A stretch of 63,530 nt of DNA, filler included, from Octopus bimaculoides (lineage: Eukaryota): assembly GCF_001194135.2 (NCBI RefSeq). It is 5 parts of 5 records of this genome, joined end to end, with 100 filler letters (N's around TTAATTAATTAA, not from the genome) between each part and the next. Parts side by side here need not be neighbours in the genome. Positions count along the whole stretch, not along the records: positions 1 to 10,327 come from NC_068989.1; 4 more parts are not named here. One strand, written 5' to 3'. Both the position numbers and the translations under genes were made by a program. Below the pieces are notes generated by a model. The model worked only from the letters and a program-made list of their open reading frames with translations. It did no database searches and was not told the DNA's origin. Positions 1,961 to 10,427 of this stretch are shown here, piece by piece (the first letter of the stretch is position 1; the number at the start of each line of letters is the position of its first letter).

Positions 1961-2400
1961 TTAATTATACTTAGAGAATGAGTATTTAGTAGCGTGAAGA
2001 CAGATTAGACTGGATTCATATCTCCTGTTTAATAGGTCGTTCTTAGCCGTTAGGATTTCGAGGCACTCGGTTAAGCAGAGTTGGCAGCGTCTGTTAGTTG
2101 GGTTATAGGAATTAGCTACTTTTAGTATGTGCCACTTTAGTTTATATTCTATATTATTGTCGTTTAGTTCCCAGATATATCTACTCAGCCCTGTATAATT
2201 TGCCTTATTTCTGTTTTTAAAACTCGATAGGTGCTCGTTATATCTAAAGCGTATTTGGTTTTTCGTTGCACCCATGTAAGATTTAGTGTGGCTGTTTGTT
2301 TGTACATCACATTGGTAAACTATATTATCTGTCTTGCATCTATTGGAGAAATTACATTTGTTCCTATCTCTACAGCCACATAGGTTATAAGGGGTGTCCT
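1961..2400 (-). pseudogene. PLE GIY-YIG endonuclease domain (frameshift near 2340)
   Basis: CGCRDRNKCNFL / NRCKTDNIVYQCDVQTNSHTKSYMGATKNQIRFRYNEHLSSFKN..KWHILK..CQLCLTECLEIL. Confidence 0.88.
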
Positions 2401-2664
2401 ATGTCTGTGTGCTGCTGTGTGGCCCTATTGTTTTTTCGGTGTGCGTCCCTCCTAGTAAGGGGTGTTGGATTAGGGTTGGAGTTAGTTCTATTATTTAGAG
2501 GGTTGTTGATTTGGTTGTTCGTTGTGTTTCTAGCTGTATAGAATGCGTCTAATTTCTTATTATTAATAGATGCTATTATGGTAGCTAAGTTACATGTCAG
2601 GCTGTGGCCTATTCTTATTTTGTGCTTAAATATTTCTGCGTATTTATTGTTCACATTGAGGTGT

Positions 2665-4008
2665 TTATCTAATTATGTTCACTAGTGAGCGGACTATGTT
2701 GGATTTGAGGCCCATGTTATAGGGAATGATTAGCCAGATCGTATCCTTATTGTTCTTGCTGCTATTATGGCCATATTTGGTACAGAAGCTGCCATCATAA
2801 CTGGGAAGGCTGGTGAATTTTTCTTTACGGCTATCTAATTTATTTCTATATTTGGGTTTATTTTTGATATGCGTCCTTTCATTGTTTTCCCTGTTAGTAT
2901 TGTTAGTTGTTTGTGGGCCCGATATATGGTTTCTTTTAGTCTTCTGGGTTTCCCTGTAATTTATGCTAAACTTATCGTTGTATTGCTTAATGTTGGTTCT
3001 GTTCAGGTGGTTATTGTATTTCTGTTTCGTCTCGTTATTAGCCTTAATCGTCCTTTTAATATTATTGGTATTGGTGTTTACATTGTTGTTGGTATTTTTG
3101 GTGTTATGTGGTTTGGCTTTGGGACGTGTTGTATTTCTATTACATGTGTTCTGTTTATCTTTGTCATTCATATCGTTAGTGTGGTTTCCAGCGGTGTTCG
3201 GTGTGTTAGTAGTGTGTGTGTTTCTAGCGTTTGAGTTCCTAGTAGTTGGGTCTTTTTTATGGTTATTGGATTCCATGAATTTAATTTTATGGTTAAATCC
3301 TGCCTTATGTAGAGCGATGTTGTAGGTTTCCTTATGCTTATTAAAAATAGCTTGGCTAGAGGAGAGGCATGATATCCTATTGCTTATACTATGTGCTAAG
3401 CCTCTCTTGAGGAATAGTGGGTGGTTGCTGGATGCGTTTATGTATTTTAGGTTAGTATTGGGCTTTATGTATGGTTCATGTAGTCCTGTGGCTAGGTTGC
3501 AATTAGCGTCTAAGTAATTTATGGATGTGTGTTCGTTTTCTATAGAAATGGCTAGTCCAAATCTTTTGAAGAATTTATGCAAGTTTTTCTTAATGAGCTC
3601 TAGTTTCCTATTCGAGGGATTTTTAATTACAAAGAGTGCATCATCCCTGTATAATCCACCTTCCAGGTCTGGGAATTCCTTCTGTATGTAGGAGAGCAGA
3701 TAAATTCCTACTAAGTCACTTATCTGAGCTGAATCCGGGGCTCCCATGGTGATAGCGAAGGAGTTAGGGGAGTCTTTACGGACCCAGAGCTTGTCATCAA
3801 ACCTTATAATAGATTTTCTAGCTTCATGTATTACATTAATTTCTTTCCTAGTTAGTTGTGAATTATTTTTGGCATATATTAGGGCAAATTTTAATATCGT
3901 GGGGTTAATTGAGGAGTAGTAGTGTGGTGGATATGTTTGTGCATATGTGTTTGTATGGGTGAATGTCTTTACACATGTAGTAAAAGCAATCCTATCTCTG
4001 ATGGTCTT
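2665..4008 (-). pseudogene. PLE reverse transcriptase, partial (stop-free frame 4008-2665; YRDD present, motif-A Asp absent)
   Basis: The ORF-track 2665..3747 frame stays open for 87 more codons up to a TGA at 4009-4011. RT homology begins at about 3921 (YYSSI). Confidence 0.85.
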
Positions 4009-5600: not shown

Positions 5601-6529
5601 TTTATTGTACATAAGAAGACACGTTTTATTAACAAATATGAGGTCCTAAAAATATTTCTTGTTCTAAAATTATAGTTGACTCATCAATATGCAGAATATG
5701 ATCTCATTTTGAAGAATTTTCTTCATGGTATGACATTTGAAGAATCCTGCATGCCTTATCCTTGCCTCTTTTTATTTTACGCAACTGCTAATAAAGTACT
5801 TATCTATACAATCATAAATGAGTTTGGGCAATATTTAAAAAGAATTTTTTTATAATGAATCTGAACTTTCAGAGTCATTAATATATTGTTTTGCATGACA
5901 AAGAATTGATTTATATCCACCAGAAATACTTCTCGACTGCAGTAAACCACTCAGAGATAGGTGGCATGTTTTCATGCCTCTACTCAAAGTAGATTCTATA
6001 TATCAGCCCAGTGCTTACATAAGTACTCTTGAATTTTATTTGACCAGGTCCGTGTATTGACATAAACACATGAAATGAATTGATGATGTACATGATGCTC
6101 TATTATCACAGTTTTAAAATTGGTTGAGATGATTGATATACTTTCATACTTAACATCATTTTCATATTCTGAGATCTGTTTTTTCCTCTTGTTTTTGTAC
6201 ACAATGACAAAGGATGGCAAATTACAGTTTATAACTTTATTCCATTAGATCCACTAACTTTATAAAATAATGAATGTGGCATTGCATACAAAATTTCTCT
6301 GGGGAGTGTTTCATATGCTGTCATAATATTGTGAATATGCACCATTGGTAAGTGGGTTGTGGCAAAATTGTTTACTTGTCTATAAAAAAACAGGTAAAAT
6401 AGCAGTGCCACATTTACCCTCAACTCCTTAATCACCCCATTTACATTAACTAAAAATGTTTTAATTCTTCATAATATGCTATAACATATATGACACTAAT
6501 TTTCATGATGTCAAATTATATAACAATAC

Positions 6530-7090
6530 CTTTATTTATCAAGTAATAATGTCTCAATGTCTTCCACCTTTGCAATTTAAGACGCATATTGGACATCAAG
6601 TGGACCAACCACATCACCAACACCGAAGTCCTCAACCAAGCCAAATACCCAGTATACACATCTTGTTCCAGCAGCGTCATTTGTGCTGGCTCAGTCATGT
6701 TCCCAAAAGACCTCCTGTATGGGGAATTGGCTACTGGCACAAATGCACAAGGATGACCTCATCTTCATTTCAAAGATGCCTGCAAGAGAGATATGAAGTC
6801 ACTTGATCTAGATGTCCAGAGATGGGAAGAGGTTGAAAATGATCGCCCACACTGGAGGCAAATACTGCAAAAGGGAATGAAAAGAGTGGAAGAAAAACAG
6901 GTACTTGCGATCGAAGAAACGTGCACTCAACAGAAGAAAAAATCAGCAGTACTAGCAGAGAGCTCCTTCAAATACAGTCATTGTATGTGTGACTGCCACT
7001 CCTGTGTGGACCTGTACAGCCACAACAGATGATGCACCACCATCAGCAGCTGACATGATTTCTCAAGACCAATGGATGCCTACTACAATG
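6530..7090 (+). mobile_element. RTE-BovB-like LINE 3' end
   Basis: LNVFHLCNLRRILDIKW, PKDLLYGELATG, FKDACKRDMKSL, WRQILQKG, and a terminal CxCDCHSCVDLYSHNR motif. Confidence 0.82.
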
Positions 7091-7399
7091 TTCAAAAGTA
7101 ATTTAAAAAGGAATACACAAGCACTTTCTATCAATTTATACTGTCGTACATGCATTTATTTTCTTTGCCTTGGTTTCCAAGTAAAAAACAAAAACTCTAT
7201 CCAGTTTGAACTTCTACAAGGCTGACTGGAAGTCAATTGAAAAATGGATTATCCAGCAAAATTGGCTCTCTATGCCAAACATTGATATGAAACTTAAAGA
7301 ATTCATGTCAATAAAGTAAGCCATATGCATTAAATTTGTCCCAGAGAAGAGAACAACAACATACAAAAACATCATACAAAAGAGCATCAACATACAAAA

Positions 7400-9290
7400 T
7401 CAAGACAGGAGAGTCCTCATGAAACAGAGAACAAAGATCACAAATCACTTAAACAAACAAGCAAAAAATCCCTACGTAAAGAAGCACTTCTTGAGATAGA
7501 AAATAGACTCAGCTCTCCCATGAAAAGGAAAGGGTAAAAAGAGAAACCAGGATGGTGGAAAATATAAAAATAAATCCCAAAGACTTCTACAACTTCACAA
7601 AAGAGTCTGCCTTAGTGCACCACAAGATAGCAGACCATCTTCTTCAAACAGCAACCCTAACTGCAGACCCCAAGACAATAGGTGAGGTGTGGAATAAACA
7701 ATTCCAGAATGTCTTCACCACTCCATTGGGAAACATGCAAGTAAGTGAGCCAACAGAGTTTTTCAACATGGCAAACTACATGGGGAAAAGGCAACGATCA
7801 ATTACATCGACATAAAAGAGGAAGATGTAATATCAGTTATTGATGAGATGAGCTCAAACTCAGCAATGGGCTCAGATGGATTTCCATTTGTTCTAAAAAC
7901 ATGCAAGAAAGCTCTTGCAAAACCACTGCAGATGCTTTTTCAGAGTTTCCTTGCATGTGGAAAACTTCCCAAACTATTAAAAGAGGGTATCATATGCCCT
8001 GTCCATAAAGGAGAAAGCAGAGCAGATGCTAAAAATAACAAGCCTATCTCTTTGAATTCACATATTAGCAAGATCATGGAATGCATTGTCAGGAGGATCA
8101 CATTCCTGGTTTCTGGCCAGGGAGGGACTGCCTCACATGATTGAGTACTGAAACAGCAGTTCAACCACTTAGATGTGAATGTGATATATCCCAACTTAGC
8201 CAAGCCCTTTGACAAAGTCGATCATGGGATAATGTCACAAACTAAATGACTTTGGTATCACTGGAAAACTGGAAGAGTAACTGCATGACTTTTTAAAAGA
8301 CAAGTCAGACAGGTGCTGCCAATAATGCTCTTTATGGGGAGATATTAAGCTGCAGTAGAGTTTCTCAAGGAACTGTACTGGGACTGTTTGTAGTGGCTCC
8401 TTCAGACATGCCCTCGGTTGTACATTCAGCCACTATCAACAGCTATGCTGATGATACAAAACTATCACAAGTGGTCAAGGACCCTTATGACATATTAACA
8501 CTGCAAAACATCATGCATGCAATATACAAATGAACTGATGAAAATAACATACAGTACAATGCTGATAAGTTTCAAGCACTCCACTATCAGCCCTCAAACA
8601 AACAGACTACAATCAGAATACACAGGGTCAGGGGATAGTGCAATCGCAGAGTTAGAATCAATGAGTGATCTGGGAATCCACATGAGTAATGATGCAATAT
8701 TCCGTGTGCATATTACCAAGATGGCAACACTGTACAGAGGAGTAGCTGGATGGAGCCTTATATCATTTAGAATCAGAAATAAGGATAACTTGCTACTCCT
8801 ATGGAGGACTTTTGTTCTCAGATGTCTGGATTACTGCTCCCAAGTATGGTCACTGCAGAGTGTCGAATTGGTTATGGAACTTGAGGCAATCTAGTGTCAA
8901 CGCAAAGAAGATAAACTTAATGAAACAGATGAACTACTGGGAGAGACTACAAGAGGCTCATTGTAGCTCTACTCCCTGGAGAGAAGATGAAAAACATATG
9001 CTGCGATATAGAGTTCCAGGGGATCACAACTGTTTATCATCTTGCCAAACAGCCTCAAAGATTTGCAAGGTGTAGATGTGGAAAGTTGCAAAAAGTACTG
9101 GGACAAGTATCTATCACAAATCCCAGATCAACTCACATTATAGCAGGAAGCACAGAAAAGAGCAGCTGCATCCAACTCAATTCTTCACCACAAACAGTAC
9201 AGACAGAAGACCCAAACACACTGACAGGTGGTGCTCCAGCAGGGGCCCAAGCTCTGTTTGAAACCAGAAGAATAAAAGAATTTATACGTA
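7400..9290 (+). mobile_element. CR1-group LINE, degraded ORF2 (RT and C-terminal part)
   Basis: SAMGSDGFP, GIICPVHKG, PISLNSHISKIME, YPNLAKPFDKVDHG, SQGTVLG, SYADDTKL, SDLGI, LDYCSQVW. Many stops and frameshifts. Confidence 0.88.
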
Positions 9291-9360
9291 TATATCAATA
9301 TNNNNNNNNNNNNNNNNNNNNNNNNNNNNNNNNNNNNNNNNNNNNNNNNNNNNNNNNNNN

Positions 9361-9400
<40 letters not shown>

Positions 9401-9610
9401 TACATTTCTAAATCTCTCAGAGATTTATGCAGTAGTGATACAATAAAGTAGTTGTATGCTGTCAACTTAATCTGACAGTTCCATGAAGGGAATAATACTA
9501 CTTCTATTTAGCCCTAGGTAGCTGCACCGCTTCCTGTCGGCCTTGACACATTTCCTGTGTCCTTATGTTTACAAGGATGAGACAAGCACTCCCACCCAGC
9601 TAAGCCTGCA

Positions 9611-9653
9611 TCCAGAGACATATTTCTGAGTCTTTGCTCATCATCAGTCTGGA
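9611..9653 (-). ncRNA. Minimal type-I hammerhead ribozyme, intact core
   Basis: Minus strand reads UCCAGA-CUGAUGA-UGAG(caaaga)CUCA-GAAA-UAUG-UC^UCUGGA. Stem I is 6 bp, stem II 4 bp, stem III 2 bp with a near-palindromic cap. GUC cleavage predicted between 9617 and 9616. Confidence 0.85.
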
Positions 9654-9931
9654 ATAGCATGACTTGCTAGTCGGAGATGCCTTGTAAACATAAGGAAATG
9701 TGTCAAGGCCAACAGGAAGCAGTGCAGCTTCCTAGGGCTAAATAGCAGTAGTATTATTCCCTTCATGGGATTATCACATTAAGTTGACAGCATGCAACTA
9801 CTTTATCATAAATCTCTCAGAGATTTAGAAATGTATTATTTCTATTTTTGAAATCAGTGAATGTATTTCACTAGAATTATTATATGTTTACAAGAGCTTG
9901 ACAGGCATCTCCGACTAGCAAGTCATGCTAT

Positions 9932-9974
9932 TCCAGACTGGTGATGAGCAAAGACTCAGAAACATGTTTCTGGG
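9932..9974 (+). ncRNA. Minimal hammerhead ribozyme copy with core mutation (CUGGUGA), probably inactive
   Basis: UCCAGA-CUGGUGA-UGAG(caaaga)CUCA-GAAA-CAUG-UU^UCUGGG. A6>G at 9941. Palindromic ACAUGU in stem III. Confidence 0.75.
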
Positions 9975-10427
9975 TGCAGGCTTAGCTGGGTGGGGGTGCT
10001 TGTCTCCCCCTTATAAACATAAGGACACAGGAAATGTGTCAAGGCCGACAGGAAGCGGTGCAGCTTCCTAGGGCTAAATAGCAGTAGTATTATTCCCTTC
10101 ATGGGACTGTCACATTAAGTTGACAGCATACAACTACTTTATATATATATATATATGAGTTTGAATTACGGAGAAATATGGATAAGTACTGTTTTTACTT
10201 TGCTAAAGATTTTCTACTATTTGAAAATAATATGTATTCTTGTTTTTTATATTATTCATTTGGTTCTTTATAGATTATTTTTAATAGATAACTTATTTAA
10301 CACTAAATTATTTATAAGTTATAGTTTNNNNNNNNNNNNNNNNNNNNNNNNNNNNNNNNNNNNNNNNNNNNTTAATTAATTAANNNNNNNNNNNNNNNNN
10401 NNNNNNNNNNNNNNNNNNNNNNNNNNN

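What the first reader, a model, noticed from the sequence alone, without database searches (positions are those of the whole stretch)
9611..9974. Two divergent minimal hammerhead ribozymes in a non-coding repeat (retrozyme / Penelope pLTR-like)
Seen: the minus strand at 9653-9611 has a complete type-I hammerhead core (CUGAUGA, 4-bp stem II, GAAA, GUC cleavage triplet, 6-bp stem I). A second copy on the plus strand at 9932-9974 has A6>G. The differences between copies imply a consensus GAAA-CAUG-UC with the palindrome ACAUGU. Established: Penelope-like elements and metazoan non-LTR retrozymes carry minimal hammerheads with tiny palindromic stem III that cleave as dimers, and retrozymes can yield circular RNAs (Cervera and de la Pena). 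Inference: this is a cephalopod ribozyme-bearing non-autonomous family, possibly mobilised by PLEs such as the two in this window.
Basis: partly seen in the sequence, partly recalled or inferred. Interest (0 to 1): 0.9.

Follow-up and report, generated by a model that had tools for sequence, protein, structure and literature searches.

The report
Decayed hammerhead-ribozyme retroelement copies in octopus
Two old copies of a short octopus repeat carry a hammerhead self-cleaving RNA motif (one complete on paper, one broken by mutation), and their layout bears the marks of insertion by Penelope-like retroelements, so this is an ordinary member of a known class rather than a new kind of element.

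Summary
The minus strand at 9653-9611 holds a complete type I hammerhead (HHR): 6-bp helix I, CUGAUGA, 4-bp helix II with loop CAAAGA, GAAA, 1-bp helix III with a tetraloop, and a GUC site. The plus strand at 9932-9974 holds the same motif with A6>G, C17>U and two other transitions.

Both lie in a 240-nt repeat (95% identical) from Octopus bimaculoides chromosome CM046609.1. The block 9395-10142 is a compound insertion between two (TA)n tracts:
- an inverted copy A;
- a 3'-half copy C;
- a direct copy B.

Copies A and C carry an optional 35-nt 3' "tail". Copy B does not. This layout is the published signature of Penelope-like element (PLE) integration, and I found the same layout in PLE relatives fetched here.

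The ribozyme looks like the canonical retrozyme or amphibian type, not the minimal PLE type. I read the block as relic copies of a PLE-mobilised, HHR-bearing, probably non-autonomous repeat.

Nothing suggests activity at this locus. The two HHRs lie on opposite strands, one is dead, and the core is no better conserved than its flanks. No further copies could be retrieved, so family-wide conservation is untested. Only one PLE lies in the window; the other element is a LINE. It is a new member of a known kind, of modest interest.

The parts
9361..9396 (.). (TA)n microsatellite on the left of the compound insertion; the assembly gap 9302-9360 abuts it
9395..9429 (-). 35-nt 3' 'tail' of copy A (CATAAATCTCTGAGAGATTTAGAAATGTATTATTT), holding a 17-nt odd palindrome
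   Evidence: (I11); optional 30-40-nt tail of PLE insertions per PMC11167929 and PMC8557442
9430..9442 (-). 13-nt insertion (TGTATCACTACTG) between the unit end and the tail; present in copy A only
9443..9682 (-). Copy A of the 240-nt unit, inverted; its 5' end is cut at the junction with copy C
   Evidence: (I1: 240 nt, 95% complementary to 9903-10142)
9611..9653 (-). Hammerhead A: complete type I core, helix I 6 bp, helix II 4 bp with loop CAAAGA, helix III 1 bp with tetraloop UAUG, GUC site; predicted cut between 9617 and 9616
9680..9806 (+). Copy C: only the 3' half of the unit (7-nt internal deletion), joined head-to-head to copy A with 3 nt of overlap at the internal palindrome CCTTGTAAACATAAGG; it sits in the position of an upstream pseudo-LTR
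   Evidence: (D1, I2)
9807..9841 (+). 35-nt tail of copy C
   Evidence: (I11)
9842..9902 (+). Spacer, or 5' extension of copy B. At least 9883-9902 belongs to the element, because it pairs with 10005-10024 to lengthen the hairpin that carries the HHR
9903..10142 (+). Copy B of the 240-nt unit, direct; it ends in (TA)n without a tail; 336-nt start-to-start period with copy C
   Evidence: (D1 spacing 336; I1)
9932..9974 (+). Hammerhead B, degenerate: A6>G in the core, GUU site, ACAUGU palindrome, helix I U.G; the would-be cut lies between 9968 and 9969
10140..10157 (.). (TA)n on the right of the compound insertion

Best explanation
Window 9395-10142 is one compound, old retrotransposition product sitting in a (TA)n microsatellite of Octopus bimaculoides. 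It is made of three 5'-truncated copies of a short non-coding unit. The unit's 5' half is a hairpin of about 45 bp with a type I hammerhead ribozyme at its tip.

The copies are arranged as an inverted copy (A), a 3'-terminal fragment (C) and a direct copy (B). They have two alternative 3' ends 35 nt apart, one with the 'tail' and one without. This is the footprint of Penelope-like element (PLE) reverse transcriptase and GIY-YIG endonuclease.

I take the unit to be a PLE-dependent element. Most likely it is a short non-autonomous, retrozyme-like derivative. Less likely it is the far 3' end of an autonomous PLE.

In the master element the ribozyme would cut multimeric or read-through transcripts after GUC. 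It would probably do so as a dimer, in which two copies pair through the palindromic helix III (ACAUGU).

At this locus the copies are relics. A keeps a complete core but has a weak helix III (AUAUGU). B is inactivated by A6>G. No two ribozymes share a strand, so neither unit-length nor circular RNA can arise here.

Shown: the motif, the repeat anatomy, the host, and the same architecture in PLE relatives.
Inferred: PLE mobilisation, non-autonomy, dimeric cleavage.
For: Motif:
- The motif is complete and beyond chance for the window.
- Its only Rfam resemblance is to a hammerhead family, HH9.
- Helices I and II are part of the minimum-energy fold. The HHR caps a long hairpin (z = -5.5 and -6.3 for about 300 nt).

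Anatomy:
- A and B are 240 nt long and 95% identical in inverted orientation. C equals the 3' half. The direct period is 336 nt.
- (TA)n lies on both sides.
- A 35-nt tail sits on A and C but not on B, and a 13-nt indel lies exactly at the unit/tail junction.

Literature:
- PLE insertions are partial tandems with an adjacent inverted 5'-truncated copy. They carry an optional 30-40-bp tail and prefer microsatellites; (TA)n is named there for the Naiad clade (PMC8557442).
- The tail is the stretch between two internal start sites of reverse transcription and is described as unique to PLEs (PMC11167929).
- Dual HHRs 100-700 bp apart on opposite strands have been reported for truncated PLEs (PMC4209133).

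Direct check in relatives of the window's PLE protein (30-46% identity in RT; the endonuclease region is homologous at E = 1e-8 to 1e-21):
- L004 shows head-to-head copies, a short direct 3' fragment between them, an HHR about 70 nt after the stop codon, and (TA)n at both outer ends.
- L003, L005 and L007 show the same HHR position, and L003 and L007 also end in (TA)n.
- The HHRs of these relatives covary strongly: 94% of cells are paired and 9 of 12 pairs show compensatory changes.

Pointers to non-autonomy:
- No copy adjoins coding sequence.
- Helix sizes (6 bp and 4 bp) and loop 2 match the canonical type I found in retrozymes (PMC7229834), not the minimal PLE type.
- The 336-nt period and 41% GC fall in the retrozyme range. 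A hypothetical circular monomer is 66% paired, z = -7.2.
Against: - Only two HHR copies are available. No further family member could be fetched, so conservation, copy number and the true 5' end are unknown.
- The HHR is not better conserved than its flanks.
- The 10.1-11.1 pair is U-A rather than the usual G-C.
- Rfam scores are far below threshold.
- A covariance model of the relatives' PLE HHRs scores copy A at 7.8 bits, within the noise.
- The unit shows no similarity to the only PLE in the window.
- In the 3' half of the unit (unit positions 127-240, called u2 in this report; 114 nt), copy B has no private changes. Yet B carries three of the four poorer states inside the HHR. So the idea that the intact state is ancestral is not proven.
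- The tail lies on both outer ends of the A-C pair, whereas the literature says it is often at one end only.
Confidence: 0.62

Rival explanations
1. The block is a working non-LTR retrozyme locus. Head-to-tail units are transcribed, each is cut by its hammerhead, and the 336-nt monomers are ligated into circular RNA.
For: - A 336-nt direct period between C and B.
- A canonical-looking type I HHR.
- Low GC and a highly structured hypothetical monomer.
- Retrozymes of 170-400 nt are known in molluscs and other metazoans (PMC7229834).
Against: - Only 1.3 direct units are present, with a single same-strand HHR (B), and its core carries A6>G.
- The intact HHR (A) is on the other strand.
- The copies differ by 4-8%, so the locus is old.
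- No expression data can be consulted here.
Confidence: 0.08
2. The copies are simply heavily 5'-truncated 3' ends (pseudo-LTR region) of a full-length autonomous PLE family of octopus. There is no separate non-autonomous element.
For: - Three different 5' ends in three copies.
- Most genomic PLE HHRs are single motifs from truncated PLEs (PMC4209133).
- Octopus genomes hold many Penelope families (PMC13282606).
- The window's own PLE loses its 3' end in a gap that is followed by (TA)n.
Against: - In five relatives' loci the HHR lies 40-75 nt from the element's 3' end and is of the minimal type. Here it lies about 175 nt from the end and has canonical helix sizes.
- The model of those PLE HHRs does not recognise it.
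- The 132 nt after the window PLE's stop codon show no similarity to the unit.
Confidence: 0.25
3. The A-C inverted repeat is a foldback or MITE-type DNA transposon inserted at TA. The hammerhead resemblance is a coincidence without RNA function.
For: - Arms of 114 nt plus 35-39 nt at 92-95% complementarity around a 136-nt centre (I2 and I11).
- (TA)n at the left outer end.
- Roughly 40 chance motifs of this quality are expected per genome (my analytic estimate; the simulation is).
Against: - Copy B has the centre plus one arm, lacks the terminal 35 nt and ends exactly at the unit/tail junction. An indel sits at the same junction in A. This fits alternative 3' ends of a retroelement and not an integral terminal repeat.
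- The right end of C is not followed by TA repeats.
- The HHR has extra canonical features beyond the descriptor.
- The PLE relatives show the same layout.
Confidence: 0.05

Closest known systems
Type I hammerheads of metazoan non-LTR retrozymes and amphibian satellite repeats (for example axolotl HHR_Amex1; PMC7229834)
   Same: - Open helix I of 6 bp with an internal loop and a distal extension.
- A 4-bp helix II with a 6-nt A-rich loop.
- Helix III of one base pair capped by a palindromic tetraloop, which implies dimeric action.
- A host unit of about 300 nt with low GC and strong self-pairing.
   Different: - Not in a head-to-tail array here.
- U-A at positions 10.1-11.1.
- No expression or circular RNA data.
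- The copies carry the PLE tail and the PLE inverted plus partial-tandem layout.
Minimal hammerheads in pseudo-LTRs of Penelope-like elements (Cervera and de la Pena 2014, PMC4209133), including those I found in L003, L004, L005 and L007
   Same: - Association with the PLE-type insertion architecture.
- Opposite-strand pairs a few hundred bp apart.
- A palindromic helix III that begins AC and ends GU.
- A U directly after A9.
- A non-G-C pair closing helix II.
- (TA)n flanks.
   Different: - The relatives have helix I of 5-6 bp, helix II of 2-4 bp framed by U/U, and a 9-nt palindrome. They lie 40-75 nt from the 3' end and just after the endonuclease ORF.
- The octopus motif has canonical helix sizes, a 6-nt palindrome, and about 175 nt between the HHR and the 3' end, with no ORF.
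- The covariance model of the relatives scores it at noise level.
Sm-alpha, the hammerhead-bearing non-autonomous retroposon of Schistosoma mansoni (mentioned in PMC6155905; details from my own knowledge)
   Same: A short, dispersed, non-coding retroposon that carries a canonical type I HHR with a similar loop 2 (CAAAUA against CAAAGA).
   Different: - Sm-alpha has a tRNA-like polymerase III head. No tRNA-like part was found here.
- Helix III of Sm-alpha is longer.
Rfam Hammerhead_HH9 (RF02275)
   Same: It is the best Rfam match. The core, the 6-bp helix I, the UA-containing internal loop and the CAAA-A loop 2 all align.
   Different: It scores 16.2 bits against a gathering score of 52. HH9 is a conserved intronic ribozyme of amniotes with a 3-bp helix III.

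Membership tests
Hammerhead ribozyme, type I | Invariant core: C3 U4 G5 A6 N7 G8 A9, G12 A13 A14, A15.1-U16.1, H17 | tested here: met
   Copy A (9653-9611, minus strand) has every position. Copy B fails at A6 (G) and therefore does not meet it.
Hammerhead ribozyme, type I | Three helices around the core with helix I open; helices I and II are stable | tested here: met
   Helix I is 6 bp plus an internal loop and a distal stem. Helix II is 4 bp. Helix III is 1 bp with a tetraloop. Helices I and II are in the minimum-energy fold.
Hammerhead ribozyme, type I | G10.1-C11.1 closing pair of helix II | tested here: not met
   The pair is U-A in both copies. Read otherwise, there is one extra nucleotide on each side of a G-C pair. 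PLE relatives have U/U at the same place.
Hammerhead ribozyme, type I | Score above the curated threshold of an Rfam hammerhead model | tested here: not met
   No hit at gathering score. HH9 scores 16.2 bits against 52. A bona fide PLE HHR (L004) also gets no hammerhead hit, so this test is weak for short-helix-III variants.
Hammerhead ribozyme, type I | Helices kept by covariation across family members, with the core better conserved than the flanks | tested here: inconclusive
   Only two copies exist. One helix I change keeps pairing (U-A to U.G). The HHR has 4/43 differences against 8/197 elsewhere, p = 0.24.
Hammerhead ribozyme, type I | Site-specific self-cleavage | not testable with these tools
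   This needs in vitro transcription of monomer and dimer constructs.
Penelope-like element insertion (pseudo-LTR or PLE-mobilised sequence) | Optional 30-40-bp 3' tail (two alternative 3' ends) | tested here: met
   A 35-nt extension follows ...CAACTACTTTAT in A and C. B ends there against (TA)n. Criterion taken from PMC11167929 and PMC8557442.
Penelope-like element insertion (pseudo-LTR or PLE-mobilised sequence) | Partial tandem plus an adjacent inverted 5'-truncated copy | tested here: met
   A is inverted, followed by the C fragment and then B, with a 336-nt direct period. The same layout occurs in L004.
Penelope-like element insertion (pseudo-LTR or PLE-mobilised sequence) | Insertion into a microsatellite, here (TA)n | tested here: met
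   (TA)n at 9361-9396 and 10140-10157. Relatives end in (TA)n as well.
Penelope-like element insertion (pseudo-LTR or PLE-mobilised sequence) | Continuity or sequence identity with an element encoding RT plus a GIY-YIG endonuclease | tested here: not met
   No ORF adjoins any copy. There is no similarity to the window's PLE (4008-1964, minus strand) or elsewhere in the window or L001. That PLE's 3' end lies in the gap 1098-1831.
Penelope-like element insertion (pseudo-LTR or PLE-mobilised sequence) | HHR of the minimal PLE type | tested here: not met
   Model R1, built from ten relatives' HHRs, scores copy A at 7.8 bits, E about 7, below AT-rich noise.
Metazoan non-LTR retrozyme | Head-to-tail tandem repeats, each with a type I HHR | tested here: not met
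   Only 1.3 direct units are present, with one same-strand HHR. The second HHR is inverted.
Metazoan non-LTR retrozyme | Unit of about 170-400 nt, low GC, no coding capacity | tested here: met
   The period is 336 nt with 41% GC. The longest frame is 50-52 aa, and the plus-frame peptide, the only frame searched, has no protein relatives.
Metazoan non-LTR retrozyme | Expressed as linear and circular RNA | not testable with these tools
   No transcriptome access.

The most novel reading that the evidence does not exclude
The unit represents an undescribed cephalopod family of retrozyme-like, hammerhead-bearing repeats that carry the PLE-specific 'tail' signature. That would be direct mechanistic evidence, from an invertebrate, that retrozymes are copied by PLE reverse transcriptase. 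In addition, its hairpin RNA may be edited by octopus ADAR before reverse transcription. That would leave A>G changes such as those seen between copies A and B at 9941, 9974 and 9995.
Probability: 0.12. Interest if true: 0.55.

Novelty: new member of a known kind. Interest (0 to 1): 0.33.

Why it matters
Hammerheads in PLE termini and in retrozymes are well documented across metazoans. I found no paper in the held library that describes one in a cephalopod.

The locus is a compact example that joins two literatures. It has a canonical-looking type I ribozyme, of the retrozyme kind, inside copies that bear the PLE tail, the inverted plus partial-tandem layout and the (TA)n target. If a genome-wide survey confirmed this, it would support the recent proposal that animal retrozymes are non-autonomous PLE derivatives (preprint 10.64898/2026.07.22.740005). 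The support would come from insertion signatures rather than from sequence similarity alone.

For the octopus genome itself the locus is a decayed repeat with no sign of present function.

Tried and rejected
Searches for more copies (all empty):
- Exact 21-25-mers of the unit in metagenome contigs and in viral contigs.
- The 50-aa frame through the unit against 5.8 billion proteins.
- The window extended by 10 kb on each side (L001). The window is bounded by assembly gaps.
- The endonuclease piece of the PLE, which found no protein relatives.

Rfam:
- Nothing at gathering score.
- The MIR8562 and MIR2646 'hits' are artefacts of the long inverted repeat.

SINE idea: no tRNA-like head was found.

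Pfam: no domain was called on the degraded PLE or LINE pieces, nor on their homologues. Classification therefore rests on motifs (YRDD; IVY...YMG...R..EH), on homology to loci with the PLE architecture, and on a tblastn match of 7806-8090 to an APE+RVT_1 ORF.

Covariance model: a model of the relatives' PLE hammerheads does not detect the octopus motif above noise.

Dimer folding:
- Copy B prefers a 22-bp intermolecular palindrome.
- The AUAUGU hexamer of copy A self-pairs at only -0.8 kcal/mol, against -4.6 for ACAUGU.

Apparent compensatory change: A6>G with U15.2>C looks compensatory only in a 2-bp alternative pairing of the nearest-neighbour fold. I do not give it weight.

The MITE or foldback reading was considered and rejected because of copy B and the variable unit/tail junction.

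Full report
**1. What is there**

I read the region directly and scanned it with my own hammerhead (HHR) descriptor.

- Minus strand, 9653-9611: UCCAGA CUGAUGA UGAG-CAAAGA-CUCA GAAA UAUG UC UCUGGA. This is a type I hammerhead with a 6-bp helix I and a 4-bp helix II. All invariant core nucleotides are present. Helix III is a single A15.1-U16.1 pair over a tetraloop, and the cleavage triplet is GUC (cut between 9617 and 9616).
- Plus strand, 9932-9974: the same motif with four transitions. These are A6>G (CUGGUGA), U15.2>C (which gives the palindrome ACAUGU), C17>U, and A>G in helix I, which keeps a U.G pair.

A loose descriptor is expected 0.0023 times in a random window of this composition. 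The observed quality appeared 0 times in 3000 random windows. My analytic estimate is about 2e-4 per window and about 40 per genome.

Features outside the descriptor also fit natural type I ribozymes:
- Helix I continues beyond an internal loop (UAU/U) into a distal stem.
- Loop 2, CAAAGA, resembles the CAAAAA of the Rfam HH9 consensus.
- Loop 3 is palindromic.

Rfam itself does not call the motif. There is nothing at gathering score and nothing at E <= 10 on 967 nt. On 75 nt the best hit is Hammerhead_HH9 at 16.2 bits against a threshold of 52. Copy B gets no hammerhead hit. A clear PLE hammerhead from another animal (L004) also gets none. The Rfam result therefore says little for ribozymes with a tiny helix III.

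**2. Anatomy of the repeat**

Both motifs lie in a 240-nt unit. Copy A is 9682-9443 on the minus strand and copy B is 9903-10142 on the plus strand. They are 95% identical (I1).

A third, partial copy C (9680-9806, plus strand) holds only the 3' half (D1 and I2). It is joined head-to-head to the 5' end of A, at an internal near-palindrome (CCTTGTAAACATAAGG), with 3 nt of overlap.

After the shared end ...CAACTACTTTAT the copies behave differently:
- A and C continue with the same 35-nt extension, CATAAATCTCT(G/C)AGAGATTTAGAAATGTATTATTT.
- A has a further 13 nt inserted at that junction.
- B stops there and runs straight into (TA)n.

(TA)n also borders the left end, at 9361-9396. The start-to-start distance from C to B is 336 nt. 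Nothing else in the window, or in 10 kb on either side, resembles the unit.

The 5' half of the unit folds into an imperfect hairpin of about 45 bp with the hammerhead at its tip. For about 300 nt the z-scores are -5.5 and -6.3.

**3. Where it comes from**

The window's 360-aa ORF is recorded on CM046609.1 of GCA_001194135.2, the chromosome-scale Octopus bimaculoides assembly, at about 30.87-30.90 Mb. The window is bounded by assembly gaps.

**4. Surroundings**

On the minus strand, 4008-1964 encodes a degraded reverse transcriptase. It has MGAPDS...YRDD and a thumb motif of the type KP..Y......HP. It is followed by a low-complexity stretch and then a GIY-YIG-like endonuclease (NIVYQC...YMGAT...RFRYNEH...C.LC).

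Pfam calls no domain on it. Its RT finds 54 other relatives. Its endonuclease aligns at E = 1e-8 to 1e-21 to the regions downstream of those relatives' RTs. I call it a Penelope-like element (PLE).

Its 3' untranslated region can be read for only 132 nt before the gap 1098-1831, and (TA)n follows the gap.

It matches an ORF with Exo_endo_phos and RVT_1 domains. A further LINE C-terminal fragment lies at 6465-7029.

**5. The PLE signature**

The literature gives four marks of PLE integration:
- Partial tandems that create pseudo-LTRs.
- An inverted 5'-truncated copy next to the upstream pseudo-LTR.
- An optional 30-40-bp tail.
- A bias for microsatellites; (TA)n is named there for the Naiad clade (PMC8557442).

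The tail has been traced to two adjacent internal start sites of reverse transcription and is described as unique to PLEs (PMC11167929). Pairs of hammerheads 100-700 bp apart on opposite strands were reported for truncated PLEs (PMC4209133).

All four marks are present at 9395-10142.

I checked them independently in loci that encode relatives of the window's PLE, taken from unidentified animals in ENA assemblies:
- L004 has head-to-head copies at 98-99% identity. A 111-nt direct 3' fragment lies between them. A hammerhead sits about 70 nt after the stop codon. (TA)n lies at both outer ends.
- L003, L005 and L007 repeat the pattern, with several ribozyme variants.
- Ten of these ribozymes, selected only by their core, covary convincingly. 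94% of cells are paired against 20-47% when the partners are slid. 9 of 12 pairs show compensatory changes. All six helix I pairs and the palindromic helix III covary.

**6. Which kind of hammerhead**

The relatives' ribozymes are of the minimal PLE type. They have a helix II of 2-4 bp framed by U/U and a 9-nt palindrome, and they lie 40-75 nt from the 3' end.

The octopus motif differs. Its helices have the canonical sizes of 6 and 4 bp. It has a 6-nt loop 2 and a 6-nt palindrome. About 175 nt lie between the cleavage site and the 3' end.

A covariance model built from the relatives scores copy A at 7.8 bits (E about 7), inside AT-rich noise. By architecture the motif is closer to the canonical type I ribozymes. 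These are reported in non-LTR retrozymes and amphibian satellites, where a one-pair helix III with a palindromic tetraloop makes cleavage depend on dimers (PMC7229834).

[quoted passage not shown] The octopus unit fits that picture: a retrozyme-type ribozyme with PLE-type insertion marks.

**7. State of the copies**

A and B differ at 12 of 240 positions. Four of these fall in the 43-nt ribozyme and eight in the other 197 nt (Fisher p = 0.24). There is therefore no sign of selection on the ribozyme at this locus.

In the 3' half of the unit (unit positions 127-240, called u2 in this report), where three copies can be compared, all nine variable sites are singletons. Four are private to A, five to C and none to B. 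B nevertheless carries three of the four poorer states in the ribozyme, and all four differences there are transitions.

- B's A6>G removes an essential core base (established hammerhead biochemistry; from my own knowledge).
- A's helix III hexamer AUAUGU self-pairs weakly, at -0.8 kcal/mol against -4.6 for ACAUGU.
- Both copies have U-A instead of G-C at positions 10.1-11.1.
- The two ribozymes are on opposite strands. No transcript carries two of them, and this locus cannot release a unit-length or circular RNA.
- A read-through transcript would instead fold into a hairpin with stems of about 240 bp.

**8. Verdict**

The finding is real and correctly placed, and its general interpretation is right. 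The locus is a relic compound insertion of a hammerhead-bearing, PLE-dependent repeat in O. bimaculoides.

It is probably a short non-autonomous, retrozyme-like element (my estimate about 0.6). The main alternative is the far 3' end of an autonomous PLE (about 0.25).

It is a new member of a known kind. I found no cephalopod hammerhead in the searchable literature. The class, its link to PLEs and its dimeric mode of action are all established.

What could not be done here is the decisive family-level test. Every route to further genomic copies came back empty.

Noticed in passing
window 1964-4008 (minus strand), gap 1098-1831, (TA)n 1055-1097: A degraded Penelope-like ORF: an RT with YRDD, an Asn/Thr-rich low-complexity stretch at about 2668-3330, and a GIY-YIG-like endonuclease ending at 1964. 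Its 3' end disappears into an assembly gap that is followed by (TA)n, so its own hammerhead and pseudo-LTR cannot be read. Pfam calls no domain on it.
   Followed up: partly
window 6465-7029 and 7507-9258 (plus strand): Two LINE-type fragments: a C-terminal piece and a frame-shifted RT. The RT matches an APE+RVT_1 ORF of L002 (E = 4e-7).
   Followed up: partly
window 9638-9947: Rfam 'MIR8562' (50.8 bits, E = 5.6e-8, gathering 211) and 'MIR2646' matches are artefacts of the A/B inverted repeat. The repeat would nevertheless give a hairpin with stems of about 240 bp, 95% paired, if transcribed. That is a possible dsRNA, siRNA or ADAR substrate.
   Followed up: no
window 9302-9360 and 1098-1831: Both internal assembly gaps abut (TA)n tracts next to PLE-type element ends. 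This agrees with the published remark that complex PLE insertions break assemblies.
   Followed up: no
window 9411-9427 and 9811-9827: The tail holds a 17-nt odd palindrome, AAATCTCT(C)AGAGATTT. Its centre base reads C on the plus strand in both the inverted and the direct copy, so it is not complemented.
   Followed up: no
window 9941, 9974, 9995 (copy B) against 9644, 9611, 9590 (copy A): Three of the eight differences in the 5' half are A in copy A and G in copy B, in or beside paired parts of the hairpin. B has no private change in the 114-nt 3' half. This might reflect variation among master copies or A-to-I editing of the RNA intermediate. It cannot be tested with two copies.
   Followed up: no
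L007 3900-7900; L005 4300-7500; L004 7700-11600: PLE relatives from unidentified animals (ENA ERZ25073825 and ERZ25878469) carry many hammerhead variants of the form CUGANGA-U-(UG..CA)-U-GAAAC-NNNNN-GUH. Helix I and the 9-nt helix III palindrome covary strongly. In L004 and L007 the elements end in (TA)n, and in L004 and L005 the copies lie in nested or inverted clusters.
   Followed up: partly
window 7342-7402: Two adjacent 30-nt A-rich direct repeats (80% identical) upstream of the LINE RT fragment.
   Followed up: no
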